This document shows positions 7,047-55,900 of a DNA stretch of 64,000 nt, in pieces (position 1 is the stretch's first letter; each line of letters begins with the position of its first letter). Source of the DNA: Cyanophora paradoxa CCMP329 (Eukaryota > Plantae > Glaucophyta); contig QPMI01000609.1 of NCBI GenBank assembly GCA_004431415.1, positions 161,440 to 225,439 of the forward strand, read 5' to 3'. Below the pieces are notes generated by a model that saw nothing but the letters and a program-made list of their open reading frames with translations, had not been told where the DNA came from and ran no database searches. Both the position numbers and the translations under genes were made by a program.

Positions 7047-7173
7047 TTTTTTTGCAAAAATGGACGTCGCATTGATACACCACGGCACATGTATCAATGT
7101 TCTACGTGACGTGCCCTTCCGACCGGTCATCTATCTAGCCGAAGATGCTAGCTAGGTGCCGGCCATGGGTCGC
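7047..7173 (-). mobile_element. 3' end of poly(A) retroposon family R2 (copy probably extends further right)
   Basis: Near-identical to the reverse complement of 40489-40615; T-run at 7047-7053; hairpin CATTGATACA-N10-TGTATCAATG. Confidence 0.65.
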
Positions 7174-8619: not shown

Positions 8620-10300
8620 GGGCCGAGGCGCGGCCAGGCGGAGCGGAGGCGCGGCGGCGCGGCTCGCCGGGCGGGGCAGAGGCGCAGCGGGCGGCTGGGC
8701 ACTCTCGTCGGGCGGCGCGGGAGGTGCGGCGGGAGGCGGCGAGGCTCGCCGCACGCGGCGGAGGCGCGGCGGGCGGCGGCGCGGCTCTCCGGGCGGGGCG
8801 GAGGCGCAGCTGGCGGCGGCGAGGCTCGCCGCACGGAGCGGGAGGTGCGGCGGGAGGCGCTGCGGCTCACGGGGAGAGGCGAAGGCGCGGCGGGCGGCGG
8901 CGAGGCTCTCCGGGCGGGGCGGAGGCGCGGCGGGCGGCGGGGCATCTCGCCGGGCGGGGCGGGAGGCGCGGCGGGCGGCGGGGCATCTTGCCGGGCGGTG
9001 CGGGAGGTGCGGCGGGCGGCGACGAGGCTCGCCGCACGCGGCGGAGGCGCAGCGGGCGGCGGCGAGGCTCACCGGGCGGGGCGGGAGGCGCGGCGGGCGG
9101 CGGGGCATCTTGCCGGGCGGTGCGGGAGGTGCGGCGGGCGGCGACGAGGCTCGCCGCACGCGGCGGAGGCGCGTCGGGCGGCGGAGGCTCTCCGGGCGGG
9201 GCGGAGGCGCGGCGGGCGGCGGGGCATCTCGCCGGGCGGTGCGCGAGGCGCGGCGGGCGGCGACGAGGCTCGCCGCACGCGGCGGAGGCGCGGCGGGCGG
9301 CGGGGCATCTCGCCGGGCGGGGCAGAGGCGCGGCGGGCGGCGGGGCATCTCGGCGGGCGGCGCGGGAGGCGCGGCGGGCGGCGGCGAGGCTCTCCGGGCG
9401 GGGCGGAGGCGCGGCGGGCGGCGGCGAGGCTCACCGGGCGGGGCGGAGGCGAGGCGGGCGGCGGGGCATCTCGGCGGGCGGTGCGGGAGGTGCGGCGGGC
9501 GGCGACGAAGCTCGCCGCACGCGGCGGAGGCGCAGCGGGCGGCGGGGCATCTCGCCGGGCGGGGCGGGAGGCGCGGCGGGCGGCGACGAGGCTCGCCGCA
9601 CGCGGCGGAGGCGCGGCAGGCGGCGGCGAGGCTCACCGGGCGGGGCGGAGGCGAGGCGGGCGGCGGGGCATCTCGCCGGGCGGGGCGGAGGCGAGGCGGG
9701 CGGCGGGGCATCTCGGCGGGCGGCGCGGGAGGCGCGGCGGGCGGCGACGAGGCTCGCCGCACGCGGCGGAGGCGCGGCGGGCGGCGGCGAGGCTCACCGG
9801 GCGGGGCGGAGGCGAGGCGGGCGGCGGGGCATCTCGCCGGGCGGTGCGCGAGGCGCGGCGGGCGGCGACGAGGCTCGCCGCACGCGGCGGAGGCGCGGCG
9901 GGCGGCGGGGCATCTCGCCGGGCGGGGCAGAGGCGCGGCGGGCGGCGGGGCATCTCGCCTGGCGGTGCGCGAGGCGCGGCGGGCGGCGGCGAAGCTCTCC
10001 GGGCGGGGCGGAGGCGCGGCGGGCGGCGACGAGGCTCGCCGCACGCGGCGGAGGCGAGGCGGGCGGCGGGGCATCTCGCCGGGCGGTGCGGGAGGTGCGG
10101 CGGGCGGCGACGAGGCTCGCCGCACGCGGCGGAGGCGCGGCGGGCGGCGGCGAGGCTCACCGGGCGGGGCGGAGGCGAGGCGGGCGGCGGGGCATCTCGC
10201 CGGGCGGTGCGCGAGGCGCGGCGGGCGGCGGCGAGGCTCTCCGGGCGGGGCGGAGGCGCGGCGGGCGGAGGCGCGGCGGGCGGCGGCGGGCGGCCCCGCC
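8620..10300. repeat. GC-rich minisatellite, ~38-bp variant units
   Basis: Recurring GGAGGCGCGGCGGGCGGCG core followed by alternating tails GGGCATCTCGCCGGGC / ACGAGGCTCGCCGCAC / GCGAGGCTCACCGGGC. Confidence 0.9.
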
Positions 10301-11111: not shown

Positions 11112-12257
11112 GGCCCGGCTCACCTTATAGAAACTGAATCCCAATGTAATACATGTTGTTTCTCAGGGCTCGGATGCAGGCGCGGGGCCCGCCCTGGGGA
11201 GGACGGGCGTGGTTCCGCGGGCCCATCATTCTCAGGTGCCCCCGGGCCCCTCACTCCCTCGAGGCGATTCTTCTGTGTCGCGACCGGCGACCCCGGCTCA
11301 CCTTATAGAAACTGAATCCCAATGTAATACATGTTGTTTCTCAGGGCTCGGATGCAGGCGCGGGGCCCGCCCTGGGGAGGACGGGCGTGGTTCCGCGGGC
11401 CCATCATTCTCAGGTGCCCCCGGGCCCCTCACTCCCTCGAGGCGATTCTTCTGTGTCGCGACCGGCGACCCCGGCTCACCTTATAGAAACTGAATCCCAA
11501 TGTAATACATGTTGTTTCTCAGGGCTCGGATGCAGGCGCGGGGCCCGCCCTGGGGAGGACGGGCGTGGTTCCGCGGGCCCATCATTCTCAGGTGCCCCCG
11601 GGCCCCTCACTCCCTCGAGGCGATTCTTCTGTGTCGCGCCCGGCGACCCCGGCTCACCTTATAGAAACTGCATTCCAATGTAATACATGTTGTTTCTCAG
11701 GGCTCGGATGCAGGCGCGGGGCCCGCTTTGGGGAGGACGGGCGTGGTTCCGCGGGCCCATCATTCTCAGGTGCCCCCCTCACTCCCTCGAGGCGATTCTT
11801 CTGTGTCGCGCCCGGCGACCCCGGCTCACCTTATAGAAACTGAATCCCAATGTAATACATGTTGTTTCTCAGGGCTCGGATGCAGGCGCGGGGCCCGCCC
11901 TGGGGAGGACGGGCGTGGTTCCGCGGGCCCATCATTCTCAGGTGCCCCCGGGCCCCTCACTCCCTCGAGGCGATTCTTCTGTGTCGCGCCCGGCGGCCCC
12001 GGCTCACCTTATAGAAACTGAATCCCAATGTAATACATGTTGTTTCTCAGGGCTCGGATGCAGGCGCGGGGCCCGCCCTGGGGAGGACGGGCGTGGTTCC
12101 GCGGGCCCATCATTCTCAGGTGCCCCCGGGCCCCTCACTCCCTCGAGGCGATTCTTCTGTGTCGCGCCCGGCGGCCCCGGCTCACCTTATAGAAACTGCA
12201 TTCCAATGTAATACATGTTGTTTCTCAGGGCTCGGATGCAGGCGCGGGGCCCGCCCT
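11112..12257. repeat. 178-bp tandem satellite, ~6.4 copies
   Basis: CACCTTATAG recurs at 11121, 11299, 11477, 11655, 11827, 12005, 12183 (period 178, one unit of 172). Confidence 0.95.
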
Positions 12258-14733
12258 ACACATATTGAAAAACGAATTTAAATCCCTCCGCTTCGCGCTT
12301 CGCGCTTCGCTCCTGGATCAGGCGAAGCCTCTTTCAGGCGAAGCCTCTTTCTCAAACCCAAAAACCGCCGATATAAATTCCTTTTTTAACCTTTTTTTCC
12401 ACTCAAGATCCCCCCTGCTAAATAATTTCCGCGTCGCACTCCCTCGAGGACGAATTATTAATTCTGCCTCGACACGGACGCGATTGCCGCTAATGACTCA
12501 GCTACCCTAACCCCCACAGACCTCTCTAGATCCATTTTTAGCGTCGTGGCTCCCCTAAGACGACCGCTCGCCCGTGGGCGTCGCGCGAAAATCGAATTTC
12601 CCTCTGGATCAATTCCGGTACTTAACCTCCGACAAATGCAGTCCGAGTCAGAAGGTGGGACCCGGTCCCGCCCGGTCCCGCGACGAAATCGCGCCAGGGA
12701 CGCCCCAGAACGATACAGAATGCCGCGCGAGGGCGAGCGCATCGCCGCAAACTCGATTTCAAGCGCCGTCGACGCTCCAGTGCGAAGAGTCGGCCGAAAA
12801 TTTGATCCAGCGCTAGCCGGTCCCGCCCGGTCCCGCGACGCGCGCAATCGATGCGTACTGGCGCGCATGGACATAGCAGGGCCTGCGCACCCCCGAAATC
12901 CGCTTTTCGGAGCCGGAACAGCGCAGGAAGGTACCCGACGGCCAAAATTCGATCCTGCACGCGCCCTGACATCTTTCCGCGCGCCCACGCCGCGGCGCAT
13001 GCGCGGAACGATAGCATAAGCATTTAAGATGTAGGCAAAGTCTTCCGCACGCTTTGCGTATGCGACGGGCCGCGAGGACCCAGCCGACCCCGAAAATTCG
13101 ATCCTGCATGGACCTGCACATCTTTCCGCGCGCCCTCGCCTCGAGCTCCGCAGCCCCGCACATCGATGCTATAGCTATATGCATTCAAGATTCTGTTTAA
13201 GCGATTCGCAAGCTCTGTGCATGCGCCTGGCCGCGAGAACCTTGCCCTCCCGGGCCTCCCTCTCAACAATATTATATATAATTCATCTCCTCTAATCTCA
13301 ACCTGCTCCGGCCTCCCTTTATTTCCTCAGTACATTAATATTCCTCTAGTTATATTCCTCTAGCCGGCCAGCGGTAGCTGGACTGGCCGTCAGCCGGCCA
13401 GCTTCCAACCAGAAAGCTGTTCGCGATCGGCCAGGCCGCTGGCCAGTGCCCTATAGGCCTACTGTGACAGCCGCGAGGGCGTCCGCGAGGCTTCGCCGTA
13501 CTTAGTGCTCCGCAGGAGCACGGATCTTGTCTCAAACCCAAAAACCGCCGATATAAATTCCTTTTTTAACCTTTTTTTCCACTCAAGATCCCCCTGCTAA
13601 ATAATTTCCGCGTCGCACTCCCTCGAGGACGAATTATTAATTCTGCCTCGACACGGACGCGATTGCCGCTAATGACTCAGCTACCCTAACCCCCACAGAC
13701 CTCTCTAGATCCATTTTTAGCGTCGTGGCTCCCTAAGACGACCGCTCGCCCGTGGGCGTCGCGCGAAAATCGAATTTCCCTCTGGATCAATTCCGGTACT
13801 TAACCTCCGACAAATGCAGTCCGAGTCAGAAGGTGGGACCCGGTCCCGCCCGGTCCCGCGACGAAATCGCGCCAGGGACGCCCCAGAACGATACAGAATG
13901 CCGCGCGAGGGCGAGCGCATCGCCGCAAACTCGATTTCAAGCGCCGTCGACGCTCCAGTGCGAAGAGTCGGCCGAAAATTTGATCCAGCGCTAGCCGGTC
14001 CCGCCCGGTCCCGCGACGCGCGCAATCGATGCGTACTGGCGCGCATGGACATAGCAGGGCCTGCGCACCCCCGAAATCCGCTTTTCGGAGCCGGAACAGC
14101 GCAGGAAGGTACCCGACGGCCAAAATTCGATCCTGCACGCGCCCTGACATCTTTCCGCGCGCCCACGCCGCGGCGCATGCGCGGAACGATAGCATAAGCA
14201 TTTAAGATGTAGGCAAAGTCTTCCGCACGCTTTGCGTATGCGACGGGCCGCGAGGACCCAGCCGACCCCGAAAATTCGATCCTGCATGGACCTGCACATC
14301 TTTCCGCGCGCCCTCGCCTCGAGCTCCGCAGCCCCGCACATCGATGCTATAGCTATATGCATTCAAGATTCTGTTTAAGCGATTCGCAAGCTCTGTGCAT
14401 GCGCCTGGCCGCGAGAACCTTGCCCCTCCCGGGCCTCCCTCTCAACAATATTATATATAATTCATCTCCTCTAATCTCAACCTGCTCCGGCCTCCCTTTA
14501 TTTCCTCAGTACATTAATATTCCTCTAGTTATATTCCTCTAGCCGGCCAGCGGTAGCTGGACTGGCCGTCAGCCGGCCAGCTTCCAACCAGAAAGCTGTT
14601 CGCGATCGGCCAGGCCGCTGGCCAGTGCCCTATAGGCCTACTGTGACAGCCGCGAGGGCGTCCGCGAGGCTTCGCCGTACTTAGTGCTCCGCAGGAGCAC
14701 GGATCTTGTTTAAATTCGTTTTTCAATATGTGT
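12258..14733. repeat. Small 28-bp inverted-repeat element (MITE/foldback-like) split by the Helitron2-like insertion
   Basis: ACACATATTGAAAAACGAATTTAAATCC (12258-12285) is the exact reverse complement of GGA (12315-12317) joined to TTTAAATTCGTTTTTCAATATGTGT (14709-14733). Confidence 0.8.
12318..14708 (+). mobile_element. Nested pair of non-autonomous Helitron2/Helentron-like elements (2 x 16-bp 5' end + 2 type-A bodies)
   Basis: TCAGGCGAAGCCTCTT x2 (12318-12349); bodies 12350-13529 and 13530-14708. Each body ends with subterminal GAGGCTTCGCC (inverted to GGCGAAGCCTC in the 5' end), hairpin GTGCTCC-GCA-GGAGCAC, then GGATCTTG|T. No TSD and no credible ORF. Confidence 0.85.
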
Positions 14734-15049
14734 TAATTTAATACTAAAATACATATTTTTCGATTAATTTCTTTAACTTTTTATGCAAACTTTGTATAAA
14801 ATAATGCAAACTTTGTATTAAAAATGAAAACGCGTTTACCAAAATGCATATTTTCGATTAAACTTCGATAGATTCAATTGATCTTATATCGATTGATTAT
14901 GTACTTTGTTGTTTACATACAAATCTGCGATAGATTAACATTAAACTACTTAAAGAACGATATAATCGCGATTAATTCGCATAAATTCGCATAAACTCGA
15001 TATATCTCTCATGTATTGAAGTAGACCACCGCCCATTCTGTATCGAAAA

Positions 15050-15310
15050 ACGCAAAAAGTGTCACAGAGTTGCATTGTGTCCAATTGAACAATCGATGAG
15101 ATCGCTGATGTACATTTTTGCACCGAAAAAGTGTCACAGAGTTGCATTATGTCCAATTAAACAATTGAGGAGATTGCGCGATTTTCTATTGGAATATATC
15201 GGAACTGCATCACGTCCAATTAAACAATCGATGAGATTCGGTTGTATATTTTAGATCGAAAAAGTGTCACAGAGTTGCATGGTCTCCAATTGAACAATCG
15301 ATTAGATTCC
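15050..15310. repeat. AT-rich degenerate ~70-bp tandem repeat (~4 units)
   Basis: AAAAAGTGTCACAGAGTTGCAT...TCCAATT(G/A)AACAAT recurs near 15054, 15126, 15200 (partial) and 15259. Confidence 0.75.
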
Positions 15311-19019: not shown

Positions 19020-19158
19020 TTTTTTTTTTTGGTGAATTACCGGCCACAGTCTCTAGACACCAGCACTGCGGGGGCTGCCCATGGCCAGGGGGCATAAAGA
19101 CAAAAAAGCAAAATAACTAAGACAAGAGCACGAAGAAAGATAAGACAAAGAGCCAAAA
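19020..19158 (-). mobile_element. Short poly(A) retroposon (family R1) with 10-bp TSD
   Basis: T11 followed by GGTGAATTACCGGCCACAG...; flanked by TCAGAGTCTA at 19010-19019 and 19159-19168. Confidence 0.8.
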
Positions 19159-31284: not shown

Positions 31285-31346
31285 ACACGCCCCCACAGTG
31301 CTGGAGTAGACTGGAGGCTGTGGCCGGTAATTCACCAAAAACAAAC
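31285..31346 (+). mobile_element. Ultra-short retroposon (family R1 variant) with 14-bp TSD
   Basis: ...CTGTGGCCGGTAATTCACCAAAAACAAAC flanked by ATTTCCTAAATATT at 31271-31284 and 31347-31360. Confidence 0.8.
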
Positions 31347-32403: not shown

Positions 32404-35400
32404 CAAGATCCGTGCTCCTGCGGAGCACTAAGTACGGCGAAGCCTCGCGGACGCCCTCGCGGCTGTCACAGTAGGCCTATAGGGCACTGGCCAGCGGCCT
32501 GGCCGATCGCGAACAGCTTTCTGGTTGGAAGCTGGCCGGCTGACGGCCAGTCCAGCTACCGCTGGCCGGCTAGAGGAATATAACTAGAGGAATATTAATG
32601 TACTGAGGAAATAAAGGGAGGCCGGAGCAGGTTGAGATTAGAGGAGATGAATTATATATAATATTGTTGAGAGGGAGGCCCGGGAGGGGCAAGGTTCTCG
32701 CGGCCAGGCGCATGCACAGAGCTTGCGAATCGCTTAAACAGAATCTTGAATGCATATAGCTATAGCATCGATGTGCGGGGCTGCGGAGCTCGAGGCGAGG
32801 GCGCGCGGAAAGATGTGCAGGTCCATGCAGGATCGAATTTTCGGGTCGGCTGGGTCCTCGCGGCCCGTCGCATACGCAAAGCGTGCGGAAGACTTTGCCT
32901 ACATCTTAAATGCTTATGCTATCGTTCCGCGCATGCGCCGCGGCGTGGGCGCGCGGAAAGATGTCAGGGCGCGTGCAGGATCGAATTTTGGCCGTCGGGT
33001 ACCTTCCTGCGCTGTTCCGGCTCCGAAAAGCGGATTTCGGGGGTGCGCAGGCCCTGCTATGTCCATGCGCGCCAGTACGCATCGATTGCGCGCGTCGCGG
33101 GACCGGGCGGGACCGGCTAGCGCTGGATCAAATTTTCGGCCGACTCTTCGCACTGGAGCGTCGACGGCGCTTGAAATCGAGCTTGCGGCGATGCGCTCGC
33201 CCTCGCGCGGCATTCTGTATCGTTCTGGGGCGTCCCTGGCGCGATTTCGTCGCGGGACGGGCGGGACCGGGTCCCACCTTCTGACTCGGACTGCATTTGT
33301 CGGAGGTTAAGTACCGGAATTGATCCAGAGGGAAATTCGATTTTCGCGCGACGCCCACGGGCGAGCGGTCGTCTTAGGGGAGCCACGACGCTAAAAATGG
33401 ATCTAGAGAGGTCTGTGGGGGTTAGGGTAGCTGAGTCATTAGCGGCAATCGCGTCCGTGTCGAGGCAGAATTAATAATTCGTCCTCGAGGGAGTGCGACG
33501 CGGAAATTATTTAGCAGGGGGGATCTTGAGTGGAAAAAAAGGTTAAAAAAGGAATTTATATCGGCGGTTTTTGGGTTTGAGACAAGATCCGTGCTCCTGC
33601 GGAGCACTAAGTACGGCGAAGCCTCGCGGACGCCCTCGCGGCTGTCACAGTAGGCCTATAGGGCACTGGCCAGCGGCCTGGCCGATCGCGAACAGCTTTC
33701 TGGCTAGAAGCTGGCTGGCTGACGGCCAGTCCAGCTAGCGCTGGTCGGCTAGAGGAATATTAATGCCATGATGTACTGAGCGAGGAAATAATTAAAGGGT
33801 GGAGCAGATCGATCTAGATTGAGCCCCATGAGAGTATTCATTTGAGCTCTTAATTATCGAACTTTCGCTAAAGGGTGGAGCAGATCGATCTAGATTGAGC
33901 CCCATTCTCTTCAAAGAGGGTGGAGCAGATCGATCTAGATTGAGCCCCATTCTCTTCAAAGAGCTACGGGAAATAATTAAAGGGTGGAGCTGAGTACCGT
34001 AGCGATGCCCATGCGTGAGCATGCGAGGGCGTGCGGAAAGCTGTGCAGGTCCGTGCAAGATCGAACTTTCGGGGTTGGCTGGGTTCTCGCGGCCCGGCGC
34101 ATCTGTAAAGCATGCGGAAGGCTTTGTCTACATCTCACATGCATATGCTATTGTCCCGCGCATGTGCCGCGGCGTGGGCGCGCAGAAAGATGTCCAGGTC
34201 CGTGCAGGATCGAATTTTTGCCGTCGGCTGGGTTCTCGTGGTCTTCGGCGTGTTCGAAGCTTGTCGAAGGCTTTGATAAAATCTCAAATGAATATTGTAG
34301 CGATGCGCATGCGCGAGGATGCGAGGGCGCGCGGAAAGATGTGCAGGTCTGTAGAGGATCGAATTTTCGGGGTGGGCTGGGTCCCCGCGGCCCCGCGCAT
34401 CTGTAAAGCGTGCGGAAGGCTTCTTCTACATCTCAAATGCGTATGCTATCGTTCCGCGCATGCGCCGCGGCGTGGGCGCGCGGAAAGGTGCCCAGGACCG
34501 TGCAGGTTCGAATTTTTGCTGCCGGGAGCCTTCCTGCACTGTTCGGCCTCCGAAAAGTGGATTTCGGGGGTGGGCAGGCCGTGCTATGTCTATGCGCGCC
34601 AGTACGCATGGATTGCGCGCGTCGCGGGACCGGCCGGAACCGGCCGGATCAAATTTTCGGCCGACTCTTCGCACTGGAGCGTCGACGGCGCCCGAAATCG
34701 AGTTTGCGGCGATGCGCTCGCCCTCGCGCGTCATTCTGTATCGTTCTGGGGCGTCCCTGGCGCGATTTCGTCGCGGGACCGGGCGGGACCGGGTCCCACC
34801 TTCTGACTCGGACTGCATTTGTCGGAGGTTAAGTACCGGAATTGATCCAGAGGGAAATTCGATTTTCGCGCGACGCCCACGGGCGAGCGGTCGTCTTAGG
34901 GGAGTCACGACGCTAAAAATGGATCTAGAGAGGTCTGTGGGGGTTCGGGCAGCCGTGTAATGTCTATCAATCGCGTCCGTGTCGAGGCAGAATTAATAAT
35001 TCTGCCTCGAGGGAGTGTGACACGGGAATTATTTAGCAGGGGGGATCTGGAGTGGAAAAAAAGGTTAAAAAAGGAATTTCGGTCGGCGGTTTTTGGGTTT
35101 GAGACAAGATCCGTGCTCCTGCGGAGCACTAAGTACGGCGAAGCCTCGCGGACGCCCTCGCGGCTGTCACAGTAGGCCTATAGGGCACTGGCCAGCGGCC
35201 TGGCCGATCGCGAACAGCTTTCTGGTTGGAAGCTGGCCGGCTGACGGCCAGTCCAGCTACCGCTGGCCGGCTAGAGGAATATAACTAGAGGAATATTAAT
35301 GTACTGAGGAAATAAAGGGAGGCCGGAGCAGGTTGAGATTAGAGGAGATGAATTATATATAATATTGTTGAGAGGGAGGCCCGGGAGGGGCAAGGTTCTC

Positions 35401-38400
35401 GCGGCCAGGCGCATGCACAGAGCTTGCGAATCGCTTAAACAGAATCTCGAATGCATATAGCATCGATGTGCGGGGCTGCGGAGGCGAGCGCGTGCGGAAA
35501 GATGTGCAGGCGTGGCCAGGATCGAATTTTTGCGTCGGCTGGGTTCTCGTGCCCTGTCGCGCCTGCAGAGCTTGCGAAAAGCTTTAAAAAGGAGTCAACT
35601 GAAAATTGTAGCGATGCGCTCGCGTGAGGATGCGAGGGCGCGCGGAAAGTTGTGCAGGTCCGTCGAGGATCGAATTTCCGGGGTCGGGTGGGTCCTCGCG
35701 GCCTGGTGCATTTAGAGACCGTGCGGAAGGCTTCTTCTACATCTCAAATGCTTATGCTATCGTTCCGCGCATGCGCCGCGGCGTGGGCGCGCGGAAAGAT
35801 CTCCGGGCCTGTCTAGGATCGAATTTTTGCCGTCGGGTATGTCCAGGATCGAATTTTTGCGTCGGCTGGGTTCTCGTGCCGTGTCGCGCCTGCAGACCTT
35901 GCGAAAAGCTTTAAAAAGGAGTCAACTGAAAATTGTAGCGAAGCGCTCGCGTGAGGATGCGAGGGCGCGCGGAAAGTTGTGCAGGTCCGTCCAGGATCGA
36001 ATTTCCGGGGTCGGCTGGGTCCTCGCGGCCCGGCGCATTTAGAGACCGTGCGGAAGGCTTCTTCTACATCTCAAATGTTTATACTATTGCTCCGCGCATG
36101 CGCCGCGGCGTGGGCGCGCGGAAAGATCTCCGGGCCTGTCTAGGATCGAATTTTTGCCGTCGGGTACCTTCCTGCGCTCTTCCGGCTCCGAAAAGCGGAT
36201 TTCGGGGTGCGCAGGCGCTGCTATGTCTATGCGCGCCCGTAGGCATGCATTGCGCGCGTCGGGGGACCGGGCGGAACCGGCCGGATCAAATTTCGGCCGA
36301 CTGTTCGCACTGGAGCGCCGACGGCGCTTGAAATCGAGCTTGCGGCGATGCGCTCGCCCTCGCGCGGCATTCTGTATCGTTCTGGGGTCTCTCTGGCGCG
36401 ATTTCGTCGCGGGACCGGGCGGGACCGGGTCCCACCTTCTGACTCGGACTGCATTTGTCGGAGGTTAAGTACCGGAATTGATCCAGAGGGAAATTCGATT
36501 TCGCGCGACGCCCACGGGCGAGCGGTCGTCTTAGGGGAGCCAGGACGCTAAAAATGGATCTAGAGGGGTCTGTGGGGGTTCGGGCAACTGTGTAATGTCC
36601 ATTAATCGCGTCCGTGTCGAGGCAGAATTAATAATTCTGCCTCGAGGGAGTGTGACACGGAAATTATTTAGCAGGGGGGATCTTGAGTGGAAAAAAAGGT
36701 TAAAAAAGGAATTTCGCTCGGCGGTTTTTGGGTTTGAGACAAGATCCGTGCTCCTGCGGAGCACTAAGTACGGCGAAGCCTCGCGGACGCCCTCGCGGCT
36801 GTCACAGTAGGCCTATAGGGCACTGGCCAGCGGCCTGGCCGATCGCGAACAGCTTTCTGGTTGGAAGCTGGCCGGCTGACGGCCAGTCCAGCTACCGCTG
36901 GCCGGCTAGAGGAATATAACTAGAGGAATATTAATGTACTGAGGAAATAAAGGGAGGCCGGAGCAGGTTGAGATTAGAGGAGATGAATTATATATAATAT
37001 TGTTGAGAGGGAGGCCCGGGAGGGGCAAGGTTCTCGCGGCCAGGCGCATGCACAGAGCTTGCGAATCGCTTAAACAGAATCTCGAATGCATATAGGATCG
37101 ATGTGCGGGGCTGCGGAGGCGAGCGCGTGCGGAAAGATGTGCAGGCGTGGCCAGGATCGAATTTTTGCGTCGGCTGGGTTCTCGTGCCCTGTCGCGCCTG
37201 CAGAGCTTGCGAAAAGCTTTAAAAAGGAGTCAACTGAAAATTGTAGCGATGCGCTCGCGTGAGGATGCGAGGCGCGCGGAAAGTTGTGCAGGTCCGTCGA
37301 GGATCGAATTTCCGGGTCGGGTGGGTCCTCGCGGCCTGGTGCATTTAGAGACCGTGCGGAAGGCTTCTTCTACATCTCAAATGCTTATGCTATCGTTCCG
37401 CGCATGCGCCGCGGCGTGGGCGCGCGGAAAGATCTCCGGCCTGTCTAGGATCGAATTTTTGCCGTCGGGTATGTCCAGGATCGAATTTTTGCGTCGGCTG
37501 GGTTCTCGTGCCGTGTCGCGCCTGCAGACCTTGCGAAAAGCTTTAAAAAGGAGTCAACTGAAAATTGTAGCGAAGCGCTCGCGTGAGGATGCGAGGGCGC
37601 GCGGAAAGTTGTGCAGGTCCGTCCAGGATCGAATTTCCGGGTCGGCTGGGTCCTCGCGGCCCGGCGCATTTAGAGACCGTGCGGAAGGCTTCTTCTACAT
37701 CTCAAATGTTTATACTATTGCTCCGCGCATGCGCCGCGGCGTGGGCGCGCGGAAAGATCTCCGGGCCTGTCTAGGATCGAATTTTTGCCGTCGGTACCTT
37801 CCTGCGCTCTTCCGGCTCCGAAAAGCGGATTTCGGGGTGCGCAGGCGCTGCTATGTCTATGCGCGCCCGTAGGCATGCATTGCGCGCGTCGGGGACCGGG
37901 CGGAACCGGCCGGATCAAATTTCGGCCGACTGTTCGCACTGGAGCGCCGACGGCGCTTGAAATCGAGCTTGCGGCGATGCGCTCGCCCTCGCGCGGCATT
38001 CTGTATCGTTCTGGGGTCTCTCTGGCGCGATTTCGTCGCGGGACCGGGCGGGACCGGGTCCCACCTTCTGACTCGGACTGCATTTGTCGGAGGTTAAGTA
38101 CCGGAATTGATCCAGAGGGAAATTCGATTTCGCGCGACGCCCACGGGCGAGCGGTCGTCTTAGGGGAGCCAGGACGCTAAAAATGGATCTAGAGGGGTCT
38201 GTGGGGGTTCGGGCAACTGTGTAATGTCCATTAATCGCGTCCGTGTCGAGGCAGAATTAATAATTCTGCCTCGAGGGAGTGTGACACGGAAATTATTTAG
38301 CAGGGGGGATCTTGAGTGGAAAAAAAGGTTAAAAAAGGAATTTCGCTCGGCGGTTTTTGGGTTTGAGACAAGATCCGTGCTCCTGCGGAGCACTAAGTAC

Positions 38401-39968
38401 GGCGAAGCCTCGCGGACGCCCTCGCGGCTGTCACAGTAGGCCTATAGGGCACTGGCCAGCGGCCTGGCCGATCGCGAACAGCTTTCTGGCTAGAAGCTGG
38501 CTGGCTGACGGCCAGTCCAGCTAGCGCTGGTCGGCTAGAGGAATATTAATGCCATGATGTACTGAGCGAGGAAATAATTAAAGGGTGGAGCAGATCGATC
38601 TAGATTGAGCCCCATGAGAGTATTCATTTGAGCTCTTAATTATCGAACTTTCGCTAAAGGGTGGAGCAGATCGATCTAGATTGAGCCCCATTCTCTTCAA
38701 AGAGGGTGGAGCAGATCGATCTAGATTGAGCCCCATTCTCTTCAAAGAGCTACGGGAAATAATTAAAGGGTGGAGCTGAGTACCGTAGCGATGCCCATGC
38801 GTGAGCATGCGAGGGCGTGCGGAAAGCTGTGCAGGTCCGTGCAAGATCGAACTTTCGGGGTTGGCTGGGTTCTCGCGGCCCGGCGCATCTGTAAAGCATG
38901 CGGAAGGCTTTGTCTACATCTCACATGCATATGCTATTGTCCGCGCATGTGCCGCGGCGTGGGCGCGCAGAAAGATGTCCAGGTCCGTGCAGGATCGAAT
39001 TTTTGCCGTCGGCTGGGTTCTCGTGGTCTTCGGCGTGTTCGAAGCTTGTCGAAGGCTTTGATAAAATCTCAAATGAATATTGTAGCGATGCGCATGCGCG
39101 AGGATGCGAGGGCGCGCGGAAAGATGTGCAGGTCTGTAGAGGATCGAATTTTCGGGGTGGGCTGGGTCCCCGCGGCCCCGCGCATCTGTAAAGCGTGCGG
39201 AAGGCTTCTTCTACATCTCAAATGCGTATGCTATCGTTCCGCGCATGCGCCGCGGCGTGGGCGCGCGGAAAGGTGCCCGGGACCGTGCAGGTTCGAATTT
39301 TTGCTGCCGGGAGCCTTCCTGCACTGTTCGGCCTCCGAAAAGTGGATTTCGGGGTGGGCAGGCCGTGCTATGTCTATGCGCGCCAGTACGCATGGATTGC
39401 GCGCGTCGCGGGACCGGCCGGAACCGGCCGGATCAAATTTTCGGCCGACTCTTCGCACTGGAGCGTCGACGGCGCCCGAAATCGAGTTTGCGGCGATGCG
39501 CTCGCCCTCGCGCGTCATTCTGTATCGTTCTGGGGCGTCCCTGGCGCGATTTCGTCGCGGGACCGGGCGGGACCGGGTCCCACCTTCTGACTCGGACTGC
39601 ATTTGTCGGAGGTTAAGTACCGGAATTGATCCAGAGGGAAATTCGATTTTCGCGCGACGCCCACGGGCGAGCGGTCGTCTTAGGGGAGTCACGACGCTAA
39701 AAATGGATCTAGAGAGGTCTGTGGGGGTTCGGGCAGCCGTGTAATGTCTATCAATCGCGTCCGTGTCGAGGCAGAATTAATAATTCTGCCTCGAGGGAGT
39801 GTGACACGGGAATTATTTAGCAGGGGGGATCTGGAGTGGAAAAAAAGGTTAAAAAAGGAATTTCGGTCGGCGGTTTTTGGGTTTGAGAAAGAGGCTTCGC
39901 CTGAAAGAGGCTTCGCCTGAAAGAGGCTTCGCCTGAAAGAGGCTTCGCCTGAAAGAGGCTTCGCCTGA
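32404..39968 (-). mobile_element. Five nested non-autonomous Helitron2/Helentron-like elements (5 bodies + 5 x 16-bp 5' ends)
   Basis: Bodies 32404-33582 (A, 1179 bp), 33583-35104 (B, 1522), 35105-36739 (C, 1635), 36740-38368 (C, 1629), 38369-39888 (B, 1520), all joined at TTTGAGA|CAAGATCC; AAGAGGCTTCGCCTGA x5 at 39889-39968. Same family as 12318-14708, opposite strand. Confidence 0.88.
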
Positions 39969-40038: not shown

Positions 40039-40113
40039 TTTTTTTTTTTTTTTTTTGGTGAATTACCGGCCACAGTCTCTAGACACCAGCACTGCGGGGG
40101 CTGCCCAGGGGGC
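40039..40113 (-). mobile_element. Short poly(A) retroposon (family R1) with 8-bp TSD
   Basis: T18 followed by GGTGAATTACCGGCCACAGTCTCTAGACACCAGCACTGCGGGGGCTGCCC (identical to 19031-19080); ATTTAATA at 40031-40038 and 40114-40121. Confidence 0.8.
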
Positions 40114-40488
40114 ATTTAATACCTATAGTAGCCGGCGCCCGTAATTTTGAAATATTTCGTATATATCATCAGAATTAAACCGGGTAAATAGGGAGGAGCG
40201 AGAGTGCTGAGGGATGAAAATCGGAAGGGTAGAAGGAATGATGGGGTACGACATCGACCTCCCGGCGGCGGGGGTCTGCAATCGCGAGAGGAGGAGAGTC
40301 GTGAAGAGCGCTATTAATATTGGTAGCTAGCTATATAGCTGTGCTGCATCGATCAGCTGCAGGTAATTCGGATTGTTTGCATGAACGCGCAACAAGTATC
40401 AGTACTAGTACTAGATTTAGCGCCCGCTCGAGCTCCACCTCCTACCCTCGCGCGCCCGCTGCCGGGGACCTCGTACGGCCGCGGCCCG

Positions 40489-40615
40489 CGACCCATGGCC
40501 GGCACCTAGCTAGCACCTTCGGCTAGATAGTTGACCGGTCGGAAGGGCACGTCACGTAGAACATTGATACATGTGCCGTGGTGTATCAATGCGACGTCCA
40601 CTTTTGCAAAAAAAA
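40489..40615 (+). mobile_element. 5'-truncated poly(A) retroposon (family R2) with ~16-bp TSD
   Basis: Ends CTTTTGC(A)8; flanked by GTACGGCCGCGGCCCG (40473-40488) and GTACCGGCCGCGGCCCG (40616-40632); second copy at 7047-7173. Confidence 0.75.
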
Positions 40616-42126: not shown

Positions 42127-42225
42127 CGGGATGGCGCGCTCGATAAGGGGAAGTGACCAGCCGCCTCCTCACTATTCGAAGCTCCAAAAAAGGGCTGAAG
42201 CTTGGCTATTAGTTGAAGGGTCGGG

Positions 42226-42400
42226 CTGAAGCTTTGCTATTCGGTACCCGTAGATCTAGACCAGCCGTCCCGGACGGCTGCTCACATCGCTTAGACCCAG
42301 GTTCGAATCCTGGAGTGAGTCTTATTCGACATCTTGCTTTCAGTCCGCGATGCGAAGATCTTTAGCTAGGACATGGACTAGAATATAGTAAGCCACCCGG
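42226..42400 (+). promoter_or_regulatory. tRNA T-arm / Pol III B-box module with upstream hairpin
   Basis: CCAGG-TTCGAAT-CCTGG (perfect T-arm, GGTTCGAATCC B box) preceded by hairpin CAGCCGTCC-C-GGACGGCTG; no complete cloverleaf. Confidence 0.55.
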
Positions 42401-42409
42401 GGCGCAGCC

Positions 42410-43495
42410 TTGGCTCATCTCTCGCTTGGTGCGCGCCTCCACACCCGTCGCCACCGCGCCCCGCGCGACGGGCGGGGCAGGGATCTCGACTCGCGACGCC
42501 CGCGCGGCGGGGTGTCCGGAACGCAGCGGCCGCGGCGGCCCATCTCTCGCTTGGTGCGCGCCTCCCCGCCTTCAGCGCCGCTCCCCGCGCGACGAGCTAG
42601 GTGAACGGAGGCGACCCGATTCGCGGCGCCTTTGCGGCAGGGCCGGCGCGGCCGGTTTGCACCGGCGGCACATGTCTCGCTTGGTGCGGGCCTCCCCGCC
42701 CTTCCTCGCCGCGCCCCGCGCAACGGGCGGGCGAAGGTAGCTCGACTTGCGGCACCTTCGCGGTGGGGGCGGCCGGGTAGCAGCGGCGGCCCATCTATAG
42801 CTTGGTGCGCGCCTCCCCGCCCTTCCCCGCCGTGCCCCGCGCGACAAGCCGAGCGTAGGCGACCCGACTCGCGGGGCTCAGCGGCGGCCCATCTCTCGCT
42901 TGGTGCGGGCCTCCCCGCACTTCGGCGCCGCGCTTCGCGCGACGGGGCGGGCGCAGGGAGGACCTCTCGCGGCGCCCGCGCGGCGACGGCGGCCGGGGCG
43001 CAGCGGCGGTTCATCTCTCGCTTGGTGCGCGCATCCCCGCCCTTCCGCGTCGCGCCCCGCGCGAAGAGGTGAGCACAGGCGACCCGACTCGCGGAGCATT
43101 CGCGGCAGGGCCGGGGCGGCCGGGACGCAGCGGCGGCCCATCTATCGCCTGGTGCGCGCTTCACCGCCCTTCCCCACCACGCCCCGCGCGAGAAGCCGAG
43201 CGCAGGCGCCCCGAATCGCTGCGCCTTCGCGGCGGGGCAGCCGGGGCGCAGCGGCGGCTCATCTCTCGCGTCGTGCGCACCTCCCCGCCCTTCGACGCCG
43301 CGCCCCGCGCGATAGCGCGGATGCAGGGAGCTCGACTCGCAGCGCCCTTGCGGCGGGGGCGGTCGGAACACATCGGCGGCCCATTTCTCACTTCGTGCAC
43401 GCCTCCCCGCCCTTCAACGCCGCGCCCTGCGCGACTAGGTGAGCGCAGGCGACCCTACTCGCGGAGCCTTCGCGGCGGGACCGGGACGGCCGGAG
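42410..43495. repeat. ~122-bp diverged GC-rich tandem repeat, 9 units
   Basis: CATCTCTCGCTTGGTGCGCGCCTCCCC-like anchor at 42416, 42541, 42671, 42792, 42890, 43012, 43139, 43260, 43382. Confidence 0.85.
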
Positions 43496-48900: not shown

Positions 48901-49110
48901 AGTCAACCAATGGCATGTTACCATGAGTAGGCTGCATGTATACTTAGCTAGTACATGCACACACTCGTACGCGAACTGTAACATATCCAGGTATCGCGAA
49001 CTTAGCTGTCGACATGAGAGCTAACTGGGTGAGCGGTAGCAAATGACCGGATGCTTGCAACCGGACGAACTAGGCCTGGCCTACGATATGGTAAGCCGCC
49101 GGAAGAGAAT

Positions 49111-49895
49111 CTGACCGGCGCCAACCAAATGGTTCGGGCTGAAGCTTGGCTATTCGGTACCCGTAGACCAGCCGACCCGGACGGCTGCTCGCATCGCTTA
49201 GACCAGGTTCGAATCCTGGGAGTGATCTTTTTCACCATCTTGCTTTCAGTCCGTGTACGAAAATCTTTAGCTAGGACATGGACTACAAAATAGTAAGCCG
49301 CCGAAGATAAGCTGACCCGCGCCAACCAAATGGTTCGGACTGAAGCTTGGCTATTCTGTACCCGTAGATCTAGACCAGCCGTCCGGACGGCTGCTCACAT
49401 CGCTTAAACCCAGGTTCGAATCCTGGGAGTGAGTCTTATTCGCCATCTTGCTTTCAGTCCGCGATGCGAAGATCTTTAGCTAGGACATGGACTAGAATAT
49501 AGTAAGCCACCCGGGGCGCAGCCTCGGCTCATCTCTCGCTTGGTGCGCGCCTCCACACCGTCGCCACCGCGCCCGCGCGACGGAGCGGGGCAGGGGTCTC
49601 GACCGCGACGCCCGCGCGGCGGGGGCGGCCAGAACGTAGAGACGGCCCATCTCTCGCTTGGTGCGCGCCTCCCGCCTTCAGCGCCGCGCCCGCGCGACGA
49701 GCTAGGTGAACGGAGGCGACCCGATTCGCGGCGCCTTCGCGGCAGGGCCGGCGCGGCCGGGTTGCAGCGGCGGCCAATGTCTCGCTTGGTGCGGGCCTCC
49801 CGCCTTCTTCGCCGCGCCCTGCGCGACGGGGCGGGTGCAGGTAGCTCGACTCGTGGCGCCTTCGCGGCGAGGGCAGCCGGGACGCAGCGGCGGCC
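49111..49895 (+). repeat. Two tandem ~201-bp B-box/T-arm modules followed by 3 units of the 122-bp repeat; direct repeat of 42226-42790
   Basis: CTGACC.GCGCCAACCAAATGGTTCGG at 49111 and 49312; CCAGGTTCGAATCCTGG in both; the first is followed by a T-run. Confidence 0.85.
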
Positions 49896-50389
49896 CCGCT
49901 TTCACTCTGGTTCACAGTCCCGCTGCACGCTTTCACTCCGGTTCGCAGCACCGGTGCAAGTTTCGCTCCCACTGTTCGCAATTGCCCGCTTTCACTCCAG
50001 TTCACAGCCCGGCTGCCATGTCTTAGCTGTGACCCCAAGCATGCAAGTACGGCGGCATCCACTGCGAGGGCACGCCACCAGCCACCCGACTCACAACGCC
50101 CCCACTGCCCACCTCCGTGGTTCGGGCCGGTAACATTTGATCACATCGCAGTGCATCCATGGCCCTGCTCCGGCACCAGCCGGCGCCCGCCCACCGGCCA
50201 TCCGGCGCCTCGTATATGCTGCCCCCATCACCTCCAGCGCCCGCGCCGCTGCCACCCAACGCCCTACGGTTCCACTGCAGGCTCCAAGGTAGGAAGGACG
50301 GCGGTCGCAACATTGGAAAGCACGCAAGCGGCCAACATCCGCCCCCACTAGGGCTCAGACACAGCCATCCACAAATATGGACTGTATTC

Positions 50390-52949: not shown

Positions 52950-55900
52950 ACGCTTTGGAGTCTTGGGAGATGCACGCGGTGGGTCGGTGTGAGATACACG
53001 CGGGGGTCGGTAGAAGGAGCATCAATGCGTGTACGAGTACCGCAGCGCCAGACTTGGGAGTCGATGCAAATTTCTCGGCCAAGGTGCGCTGCTCTTCTAC
53101 CACCAGTTGCGGTTTAGCGACTTCAAAAACAGACGTGCCCAAGCGATATGAAGATTGTCTGACGGACACAATCCGCGTGGCCAGTGCACGGAGCCGGGCA
53201 TTCTCCCGTATATCCGACGGATTCGGAGCGAAGTACAACCAGCGGTCGAGTGACGGAGTGCTGCACATTGCAATGTCGGTAACTCGGAGACGTCGCTGTC
53301 GGAATCCATTGTGCCAGTGGGATCGCAGATTGGTGCGCACGTCCTTTGCCTTTCTTCCGTCTAGCCATAGGGTCACGCAGTACATTGGTGAAAATGATGT
53401 CCGCAGATGATCGAACCGACTACATGCGACATACGCCATGTTGTAGGTGAAAGCGCGTGACAAATCAACGACTATCTTGACAGTGTGAGGCCTTGACACT
53501 TGTGAACGGTTACAGCCCACGCCAGACGAAAAGGGAACTGAGTGCGAGAAGGAGCGGAACTTGTAGATTTTGCCGCATTCGTCAAACCAGGAATCACTTC
53601 GTGCTCAGTTTGAGTAGGCAGTGCTGAAGACTTGTCGTGGATAACTGGTTCGTTGATATGTCACGCTCAGACGGCTCAACACGTACGGCCTGGTAATCAA
53701 CACCGGCCAGTGTCACTTTCGTACGTCCGCGCTTCCTGCCGACTTTGTCGTCGTCAAAAGCCACATACATGGCAACTGGAGAATTCTTGTCAAGTAGCCG
53801 AACAGTCGACGAAGCTGTAGGTACTGGACCGTCAAACTCCCATCCAACCAGCGTCCAGCGCGCCATTTACAAGACATCGTGCGTGTCCTCATTGATGATC
53901 ATCATAACCCGCGAGCCAAGCAGAAGGTGAACTTCGCCAATAAGAGGTCGCCATTTTATTCTGCACCACGAACGCACAAGCTTAAAAAACAACTGATACT
54001 CTGGCGGACATGGGTTCGTACCTCAACCGGTTCAGCTGGTTTACACGTTTGGATTTGTGATCATACTCTCCTTCATCGAAAGCTCAAGTGTGATAATCGG
54101 AGCCAAATACCGACGGGACGTTGCAAAGAGACGATCATTGTTGTAATTCAGTACTTCTCTGTTGCAAGGGAAGACTCGCAACGCTGTTTCCCAGGCGGGG
54201 GATGCTAGTTCGCAAGCCAGTGCAGCATACCCCGACGGTTCTCCTCGGGGTTCACAGATCTGCACGGTGCGTTCACAGAAAGGCGAGCGGCGGTGCAATA
54301 CAGGGATGTAATGGTTTCAGAACGTACCTGGACAGAATGAATTGCTTATCACGGTCATCAAATTCTCCGACTCGTAATCGCAAACATGTGTCACGCCACA
54401 TGGTGTCTCCAGCTTGCCTGACGACCTCATCGAGGAAGATAGGGTGAAACAAAGACAGCCACAGGTGAATATCATCAACCAGTTCGCCACTGCGCTTGAA
54501 GGTACGCCACATCCGTCTTTCGAAAATGTTGTAAATCCGTTTCTCCTGCACTGGCGGAAGTTGGAAGAAATCCCGAAGCACAGGATAGATTTCCCTGCGA
54601 ACGGCTCCGCCACCTGGAAGATCTCCTGTAACCGCTGATTGATTCGAGGAAAGTTCTTGCCGCCAACAAAGCTGATCTCGTCAATAATGATAAGTTCGAC
54701 ATCACGGAACCTTGCATTCAATTGGCACGCTCGGGCGCAGATAAAGGATAGAATGTATTTTTTCGCCGTGTTTGGGAGGAGCCCAAAAGCTAGCACAGAT
54801 GACACGGTGCTACCTCGATGTTGAAGGATGCCACGCCAGACCAGGACATGAGTAATATGCCGCCATTGCCACACGGTTGCTGCATGTTTGCGTGGTCACG
54901 ACTCCAGTTGAGCATGTACTTAACAATGGTTTTGATAAGAAAAGATTTGCCAGTCCCGCCTGGACCAACACACGCAATGTGCAGAGGCTGCTTAGGGGAT
55001 ACGACAGGAAGCTCTTTGTGACGACATTCGGCATCCGGAATTAGCGGCCACAATAGATTTGTACCTGTTCATATAGTACAATTAATAAAGATCACCACAC
55101 CATCTAGAGCACGAGCAGCGTACTCAGCTTGGTTGAGTAGTGCTTTTCGAGCCGAGTTGTCATCTGACGAATCGCAACCATCAATTCCGCTGCCTTGGCT
55201 TCAGCTTATCCTCATTTCCGAGAGGCTCATCGAATCGAGGTCATGTAAATCAACTCCCGAAGAGGCGGGGGTCCAGCAGAGGTGCGGTAGGAACATCATC
55301 CGCACCAGAGGGCTGAAGTCATCCGCACCAGAGGGCCGAAATAGATACGTCGGAGTGGGCAGTGCCGACAACGTTGCATCACGCGCTACCGTTGACGTAA
55401 CTCGCGTCGGTACTATCGATGGCTCGTCACGAACGTCGTCGACCCCATTAAAGCCGACTGTTGGCCCAGGCGCAGGTGATGTACAGAAGAAGCAGTGCCA
55501 TTGTGGACCGGTTATCCGGTTTAAATTCTTGCCGGCGACCAAGCGAGCATCACGATCGAACTTCTGGAGGACCGTTCAATCCGGGCAGCCATTTGACAGT
55601 GAGTGAACTGAATATTGTACTCGATAGTAGCACGATGCCGGGTGACGGCAGCAGAAATGACGGCAGGAGTAACTTCATCTCGGACTCAACACCAAGTAAA
55701 TCACGTAGCTCGTTCCGAAATGGTACGTGCATCAACAGCAGACTGTACAGGCCTTCGGGTCACCATCCTTTGGAATTCGCACTCTCACAGTCCTCGGTCG
55801 ACGTCGCTGTTGAAGGATGTGGCGTTGAAAGGGCCTCAACAGAGAAGACCGAGGGCACACACTGCGCAGGCAATAAATGAGATAGAGCTCGAGGGCACGT

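What the first reader, a model, noticed from the sequence alone, without database searches (positions are those of the whole stretch)
32404..39968. Self-targeting rolling-circle element that keeps an ordered, self-counting record of its insertions
Seen: five bodies joined head-to-tail, each lacking the 16-bp 5' end, while exactly five copies of that 16-mer (TCAGGCGAAGCCTCTT on the minus strand) are stacked at one end. The other locus has exactly 2 and 2. The bodies are three length variants in the order A-B-C-C-B, so simple rolling-circle overrun of one template cannot explain them. Circle integration by homologous recombination would give (16mer-body)n, which is also not seen. Inference: each new element inserts precisely at the CTT^TCTCAAA site between a resident's innermost 16-mer and its body, giving (16mer)n(body)n. 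The array is then polarised (A oldest, 38369-39888 newest), the 16-mer count tallies the events, and the element makes its own safe harbour. No insertion lies between two 16-mers, so specificity seems to need body sequence. Established: asymmetric terminal inverted repeats plus a 3' hairpin and no TSD define Helitron2/Helentrons. From memory, multiple 5' ends were reported for Fusarium FoHeli elements, but I know of no description of this strict n:n bookkeeping.
Basis: partly seen in the sequence, partly recalled or inferred. Interest (0 to 1): 0.92.

Follow-up and report, generated by a model that had tools for sequence, protein, structure and literature searches.

The report
Self-nesting Helitron2-type transposon arrays
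A short non-coding rolling-circle transposon appears to have inserted new copies again and again exactly 16 bases inside the start of a resident copy, which stacks the starts and lines up the bodies; self-insertion is already described in fungal Helitrons, and what stands out here is the single fixed site and the intact nests.

Summary
Observation confirmed. At 32404-39968 (minus strand), five exact 16-mers are followed by five head-less bodies, B-C-C-B-A from the stack outward. At 12318-14708 there are two 16-mers and two A bodies. No other 16-mer or body head occurs in the window.

One 16-mer plus one body is a non-autonomous Helitron2/HLE2 (HINE-like) element: 11-bp asymmetric inverted repeats, a hairpin at each end, no TSD. 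Its ends are confirmed by a rebuilt empty site and by a paralogous empty site in read contigs.

Best explanation (0.75): successive insertion of whole elements at T^T just after the innermost 16-mer. Random use of TT sites is excluded (p about 1e-10). The preference for the innermost head rests on p=1/24 only.

Stacked 5' ends from self-insertion are published for Fusarium FoHeli (up to five), with several different repeat lengths and, as described, one 3' end.

The scan already noted this pattern on other pieces of this genome (probably Cyanophora), and one unchecked note says n:n fails there. New variant of a known kind.

The parts
39889..39968 (-). Stack of five exact 16-nt element heads; each holds the 5' asymmetric inverted repeat (nt 4-14) and a 4-bp stem GAA-loop hairpin (nt 3-13)
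38369..39888 (-). Body B (1520 bp); with the innermost head (39904-39889) it forms the only intact element; inferred newest
36740..38368 (-). Body C (1629 bp), lacks its own head
35105..36739 (-). Body C (1635 bp), lacks its own head; one substitution from its neighbour C
33583..35104 (-). Body B (1522 bp), lacks its own head; one substitution from the other B
32404..33582 (-). Body A (1179 bp), outermost; inferred oldest
32436..32446 (-). 3' subterminal inverted repeat (11 bp, ends 32 nt before the 3' end); the same in all seven bodies
32412..32428 (-). 3' hairpin (7-bp stem, GCA loop), followed by 8 nt ending in CTTG; the same in all seven bodies
12318..12349 (+). Second locus: two exact 16-nt heads
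12350..13529 (+). Second locus: inner body A (1180 bp)
13530..14708 (+). Second locus: outer body A (1179 bp); no substitution against the inner A
12258..12285 (+). Left arm of a 28-bp host inverted repeat. Its right arm (12315-12317 joined to 14709-14733) is split by the insertion, which fixes the element's ends and shows there is no TSD
   Evidence: paralogous empty site in read contigs, table 7

Best explanation
The unit is a non-autonomous Helitron2/HLE2 (HINE-like) element, 16-nt head plus body (1.2-1.65 kb), moved in trans by a RepHel transposase encoded elsewhere. Besides ordinary T-rich targets, it inserts, in the same orientation, into the T-run directly after the 5' hairpin of a resident copy (between nt 16 and 17, or 17 and 18 in the equivalent register). 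Each arrival pushes the old head outward and recreates one intact left end (head plus body start), which becomes the next target. The result is (head)n(body)n, with the newest copy next to the stack. Shown: anatomy, ends, no TSD, layout, mixed subfamilies. Inferred: nested insertion and its order. Proposed: the transposase docks on an intact left end as it does on a donor and uses it as an acceptor. The donor nick (2 nt 5' of the hairpin stem) and the self-target nick (3 nt 3' of it) both lie at the foot of the same hairpin. Outer heads, cut off from the body start, are no longer recognised.
For: Counts of 5:5 and 2:2 with no 3'-end-to-head junction in the window, and none listed among the joints in four runs' contigs (absence in contigs is weak evidence). 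Three subfamilies about 9% apart in one array exclude copying of one template. The head belongs to the element, as shown by the split host inverted repeat and a paralogous empty site. The resident arrays offer 135-718 TT sites; all five nested events at one site has p=4.7e-13, about 6e-11 if the first event may pick the site. Independent head and body counts would give heads of 2 and 5 about 1% of the time under a simple geometric null. The first 22 body nt are invariant across A, B and C. Self-insertion near the 5' end is the published explanation of multiple 5' termini in FoHeli.
Against: Only two loci were examined, with no single-molecule read check. Innermost-head preference rests on p=1/24. 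No autonomous partner with these ends was found: the HLE2-type RepHel in the window has no matching ends inside it. The 22-nt invariant block is not significant alone (about 10% of the first 250 alignment columns vary). The docking step is untested.
Confidence: 0.75

Rival explanations
1. Same fixed target, but some nests form before they reach the locus or move as blocks: a homodimer made by local re-insertion, or circle into circle, inserts as one unit. The heads then count copies and order is kept only between blocks; locus 2 could be three or four events rather than five.
For: Adjacent identical pairs at both loci: A-A with no substitution, while the third A differs at one site; C-C with one substitution. 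The family has many variants in the genome, so identical neighbours are more than random donors would give. No monomer in the window. An unchecked note reports a window with four dimers out of four copies (s1-512855). Composite transposition is described for Helitrons (PMC4067079).
Against: It needs read-through of the strong first 3' hairpin and initiation at an outer head. A few dominant master copies or local re-insertion explain identical neighbours without block moves.
Confidence: 0.12
2. Heads and bodies multiply separately: bodies by tandem insertion, read-through or unequal crossing-over, heads by slippage or as FoHeli-like multi-head chimaeras. The equal counts at the two loci are a coincidence.
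For: A body alone starts with TC and ends with a hairpin plus CTTG, close to a canonical Helitron outline. Tandem Helitron arrays are known. Multi-head elements transpose as such in Fusarium. One unchecked note reports unequal counts elsewhere in this genome.
Against: Head counts of 2 and 5 matching the bodies has a chance near 1% under a simple null. All seven heads are exact and in register. Mixed subfamilies need repeated arrival of foreign bodies exactly at CTTG^T without their heads, for which no mechanism is known.
Confidence: 0.08
3. Assembly artefact: a long-read assembler collapsed or expanded near-identical repeats and produced the counts.
For: Homopolymer indels suggest noisy long reads; the family is high-copy; no raw long reads could be checked.
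Against: Three distinct subfamilies, a substitution between same-type copies, distinct flanks on the two sides, an array of only 7.6 kb, the same logic at a second locus on the other strand, and an exactly rebuildable empty site.
Confidence: 0.05

Closest known systems
FoHeli1/FoHeli2, Helitron2 elements of Fusarium oxysporum (PMC5148889; PMC13342296)
   Same: Start with TCAG; 5' hairpin with a GAA loop; asymmetric inverted repeats; 3' hairpin; stacked 5' termini (two, three or five) explained by self-insertion.
   Different: In FoHeli the repeated heads have several lengths (31, 65, 73, 85 nt), are described with a single 3' terminus, and move as chimaeras. Here the site is always nt 16, every head is matched by a complete body in both loci, and the nests are intact.
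Non-autonomous Helentrons: HINE and DINE-1 (PMC4067079)
   Same: No coding capacity; palindromic subterminal inverted repeats of at least 11 bp, 2-4 nt from the 5' end; 3' stem-loop; internal tandem repeats; T-rich target; no TSD.
   Different: Nested self-insertion at a fixed terminal site is not described in the passages read; clustering and tandem arrays there are ascribed to bypassed termination. The subTIR here begins 43 nt and ends 32 nt from the 3' end (38-60 bp reported).
Helitron2 of Chlamydomonas and others (Bao and Jurka 2013, PMC3627910); HLE2 of HELIANO (PMC11417382)
   Same: 8-15 bp ATIRs, hairpins at both ends, 5' T; HelenXT233 also carries two left ends in direct repeat.
   Different: The 5' ATIR starts 3 nt in (0-2 reported) and the 3' ATIR ends 32 nt from the end (20-30 reported). 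No TSD, unlike CRe-1/2/3. The outer target at locus 1 reads A^T if the element starts with T.
Tandem arrays of canonical Helitrons (cited in PMC5876387 and PMC4067079)
   Same: Head-to-tail bodies of a rolling-circle element.
   Different: Those have complete end-to-start junctions (3' end joined to 5' end); here no such junction exists and the heads are pooled at one end.
Zepp nested LINE clusters of Coccomyxa/Chlorella (PMC3446292); integron and CRISPR arrays (own knowledge)
   Same: Works like them: an element that targets itself, or an array that grows at one fixed end and so keeps an order of arrival.
   Different: Unrelated chemistry (retrotransposition, tyrosine recombinase, Cas1-2 integrase); an analogy only, no membership.

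Membership tests
Helitron2/HLE2 (non-autonomous, HINE-like) | Short asymmetric terminal inverted repeats, 8-15 bp | tested here: met
   11 bp, nt 4-14 against nt -43 to -33; definition from PMC3627910
Helitron2/HLE2 (non-autonomous, HINE-like) | 5' hairpin that includes the 5' ATIR; 5' end begins with T | tested here: met
   4-bp stem with GAA loop at nt 3-13 is the minimum-energy fold, though weak and not better than shuffles; starts with TC
Helitron2/HLE2 (non-autonomous, HINE-like) | 3' hairpin just downstream of the 3' ATIR | tested here: met
   7-bp stem, 8 nt from the end, in all seven bodies
Helitron2/HLE2 (non-autonomous, HINE-like) | Insertion at T^T or in T-rich sites without TSD | tested here: met
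   No TSD at either locus; empty site rebuilt and seen in a paralogue; T^T at locus 2 and at the self site; at locus 1 A^T or T^T depending on which T belongs to the element
Helitron2/HLE2 (non-autonomous, HINE-like) | Ends shared with an autonomous element encoding an HLE2-clade RepHel | tested here: inconclusive
   A frameshifted RepHel lies at about 58000-52950; its nearest fetched relatives carry DUF6570, which HELIANO gives as an HLE2 marker. Its ends do not match this family inside the window, and the rest of the genome could not be searched
Helitron2/HLE2 (non-autonomous, HINE-like) | Circular intermediate with joined ends | not testable with these tools
   No joined-end joint listed in the contigs of four runs, but contigs drop rare forms
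Canonical Helitron (HLE1) | 5' TC and 3' CTRR, no terminal inverted repeats | tested here: not met
   Ends in CTTG, not CTRR, and carries an 11-bp ATIR and a 5' hairpin; definition
Helentron in the strict sense (endonuclease-encoding) | Autonomous partner with an apurinic/apyrimidinic endonuclease domain | not testable with these tools
   Partner not identified
FoHeli-type multi-5'-terminus chimaera | [quoted passage not shown] | tested here: not met
   Every head is matched by a body with its own 3' end at both loci, against PMC5148889

The most novel reading that the evidence does not exclude
This family's transposase treats the intact left end of a resident copy as a site-specific target and ignores heads cut off from their body, as both target and origin. 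Arrays would then grow strictly at one end, one head per event, as a faithful chronological record of rolling-circle transposition and a programmable landing pad for an HLE2 transposase: a site-specific self-homing mode not found described for eukaryotic rolling-circle elements in the papers searched.
Probability: 0.3. Interest if true: 0.72.

Novelty: new variant of a known kind. Interest (0 to 1): 0.46.

Why it matters
How Helitron-like transposases choose and cut their targets is poorly known; usually only a dinucleotide preference is reported. A family that hits the same bond next to its own 5' hairpin five times out of five gives a defined natural target for testing whether the left end doubles as an acceptor. 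It also shows the intact nests that were only postulated as precursors of multi-head FoHeli elements. And it offers a route from dispersed element to kilobase satellite that differs from rolling-circle overrun, with arrays that may order the activity of subfamilies in time.

Tried and rejected
Single-template rolling-circle overrun: rejected, because three subfamilies lie in one array. Homologous integration of a full circle: rejected, because it predicts 3'-end-to-head junctions and there are none. TSD-forming or cut-and-paste element: rejected.

Coding or structured-RNA element: the 324-aa antisense ORF in body B has no homologues within the tool's length window and is not conserved in A or C; no Rfam match.

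Relatives elsewhere: none in viral contigs; four metagenome hits share only the 18-20-nt pattern and look like chance.

More DNA of this genome through protein look-ups: ten window ORFs are not in the collection; the best RepHel relatives are 51% identical or less, and the four contigs fetched share no DNA with the element. The neighbouring RepHel as partner: no matching ends in the window.

A longer 5' stem pairing nt 1-7 (one bulge) with nt 33-38, like the DINE-1 5' inverted repeat, would put the target in its loop and exist only for the innermost head. The shuffle frequency is 0.002, but the test was chosen after the fact and the fold is weak, so it is kept as a lead only.

A paper on HeT-A 5' tags as an analogue was not found.

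Full report
Observation. On the minus strand, five identical 16-nt units (39968-39889) are followed directly by five bodies joined head to tail: B (39888-38369), C (38368-36740), C (36739-35105), B (35104-33583) and A (33582-32404). A second locus on the plus strand has two 16-mers (12318-12349) and two A bodies (12350-13529, 13530-14708). The 64-kb window holds exactly seven 16-mers (no others within two mismatches) and seven body starts. It has five junctions of a 3' end to a body start and none of a 3' end to a 16-mer. Copies of one type differ by at most one substitution plus single-base homopolymer indels of the kind noisy long reads leave. The types differ by about 9% over the first 790 bp, in the number of internal ~149-bp units and in a 3' block, but share the last 121 and the first 22 body nucleotides.

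What the unit is. One 16-mer plus one body has the terminal anatomy of a non-autonomous Helitron2/HLE2 element. An 11-bp inverted repeat lies at nt 4-14 and again 43-33 nt before the 3' end; no random internal segment pair matched this. The 5' copy folds into a small GAA-loop hairpin, and the 3' copy is followed by a 7-bp hairpin and eight terminal bases ending in CTTG. These are the features that Bao and Jurka give for Helitron2 (PMC3627910) and Thomas et al. for HINE/DINE-1 elements (PMC4067079). The 5' end resembles FoHeli1 and FoHeli2, which are described as starting with TCAG and carry a GAA-loop hairpin (PMC5148889). It is not a canonical Helitron: there is no CTRR, and it has ATIRs. No coding or Rfam signal was found.

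Ends and target. At locus 1, removing 12318-14708 restores a perfect 28-bp inverted repeat of the host. Contigs from public runs show a paralogue of that host hairpin in which the bases before the insertion join 14709 directly (loose ends at 12288 and 14709). So the outer 16-mer belongs to the insertion and there is no TSD; locus 2 has none either. Because a T flanks both ends, two registers fit; in either, the self target is the T-run directly after the 5' hairpin.

Family context. The body is held by 20 runs of one organism and shows very high depth with many variant letters in the four runs laid, so this looks like a large, diverse family in one genome. Earlier notes of the scan name the genome as probably Cyanophora paradoxa; I did not verify this. 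No relative was found in viral or metagenome contigs. A broken RepHel lies 13-18 kb away. Its closest fetched relatives carry DUF6570, which HELIANO gives as an HLE2 marker, so the genome probably has the right class of enzyme. But this copy has no matching ends in the window, and the partner remains unidentified. I searched RepHel pieces one frame at a time by reference and did not join a spliced model.

How the arrays arise. Overrun of one template gives identical bodies, which B-C-C-B-A is not. Homologous integration of an end-joined circle gives head-body repeats with 3'-end-to-head junctions; none exists in the window, and none was listed among the joints in four runs, although contigs cannot prove absence. 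Insertion of a whole element after the innermost head gives (head)n(body)n directly. The resident arrays offered 135 to 718 TT sites on the two strands; five of five events at the same bond has p=4.7e-13, or about 6e-11 if the first event may choose the site. Unlinked growth of heads and bodies would give the observed head counts about 1% of the time under a simple geometric null. The finer claim, that only the innermost head is used, rests on three informative events: p=1/24 if every head were equally good.

Proposed mechanism (inferred). Helraiser nicks its plus strand at the left end and forms end-joined circles that serve as donors (PMC5876387). Here the donor nick and the self-target nick flank the same hairpin, two and three bases from its stem. 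A transposase docked on a resident's left end could therefore use it as an acceptor, and a need for the invariant body start would restrict this to the innermost head. A possible longer stem (nt 1-7 with nt 33-38) would do the same, but it is a weak, after-the-fact lead. Base pairing of the incoming 3' ATIR with the resident's 5' ATIR is another way to position the cut, but it would not tell the heads apart.

Limits of the 'record'. The heads count copies. The identical neighbours A-A and C-C may come from local re-insertion, from a few master copies, or from dimers that moved as blocks; in the last case the count of events is lower. The order A oldest, B newest follows from the model and could not be dated independently. 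Recombination between bodies, suggested by the mosaic pattern, would in time break n:n, and an unchecked note reports such an exception on another piece (s1-515307). A benefit as a safe harbour was not tested.

Comparison and novelty. [quoted passage not shown] In TR4 strains, copies with up to five 5' termini occur (PMC13342296). A frog HLE2 also has two left ends in tandem (PMC11417382). So the habit and the route are known. In the papers searched I did not find a single fixed site right after the hairpin, or intact nests with matched counts. The scan has noted the same pattern several times in this genome; these are unchecked notes, not independent evidence. Verdict: a real and unusually clean variant of a known kind; interest 0.46; probability 0.3 that strict site-specific self-homing holds genome-wide, which would merit about 0.72.

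Noticed in passing
window 58000-52950 (minus) and about 51060-50390: Frameshifted RepHel gene (Rep motif near 57511, helicase P-loop near 54966). Its nearest fetched relatives carry DUF6570, so it is probably HLE2-type. Its ends were not located.
   Followed up: partly
window 11114-12317 and 14709-15310: The host of locus 1 is itself a repeat: a 178-bp satellite, a 28-bp-arm hairpin and an AT-rich stretch with 70-135-bp internal repeats. Read contigs show high depth and a paralogue with a different hairpin loop.
   Followed up: partly
window 12290-12310: Three tandem copies of the 7-nt core of the element's inverted repeat (complementary orientation) end 7 nt before the locus-1 insertion point. 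The locus-2 flank has none, so this may be chance.
   Followed up: partly
bodies A, B, C (alignment): The subfamilies look mosaic: C is closer to B in the first 250 columns but nearly identical to A over the last 450, which suggests recombination or replacement of a 3' block. Length differences come from the number of ~149-bp internal repeat units.
   Followed up: partly
window 19020-19084, 40046-40110, 31289-31345: Three short (57-65 bp) related pieces with A-rich tails, probably 5'-truncated retroposon ends.
   Followed up: no
window 7047-7173 and 40488-40614: 127-bp dispersed repeat, 97.6% identical, in inverted orientation, each copy beside a T-run.
   Followed up: no
window 42218-43493 and 49070-49911; 8624-10277: Related arrays of ~121-bp GC-rich units at 42.2-43.5 kb and 49.1-49.9 kb, flanking a lower-GC block, and a 13.5-copy 121-bp array at 8.6-10.3 kb.
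   Followed up: no
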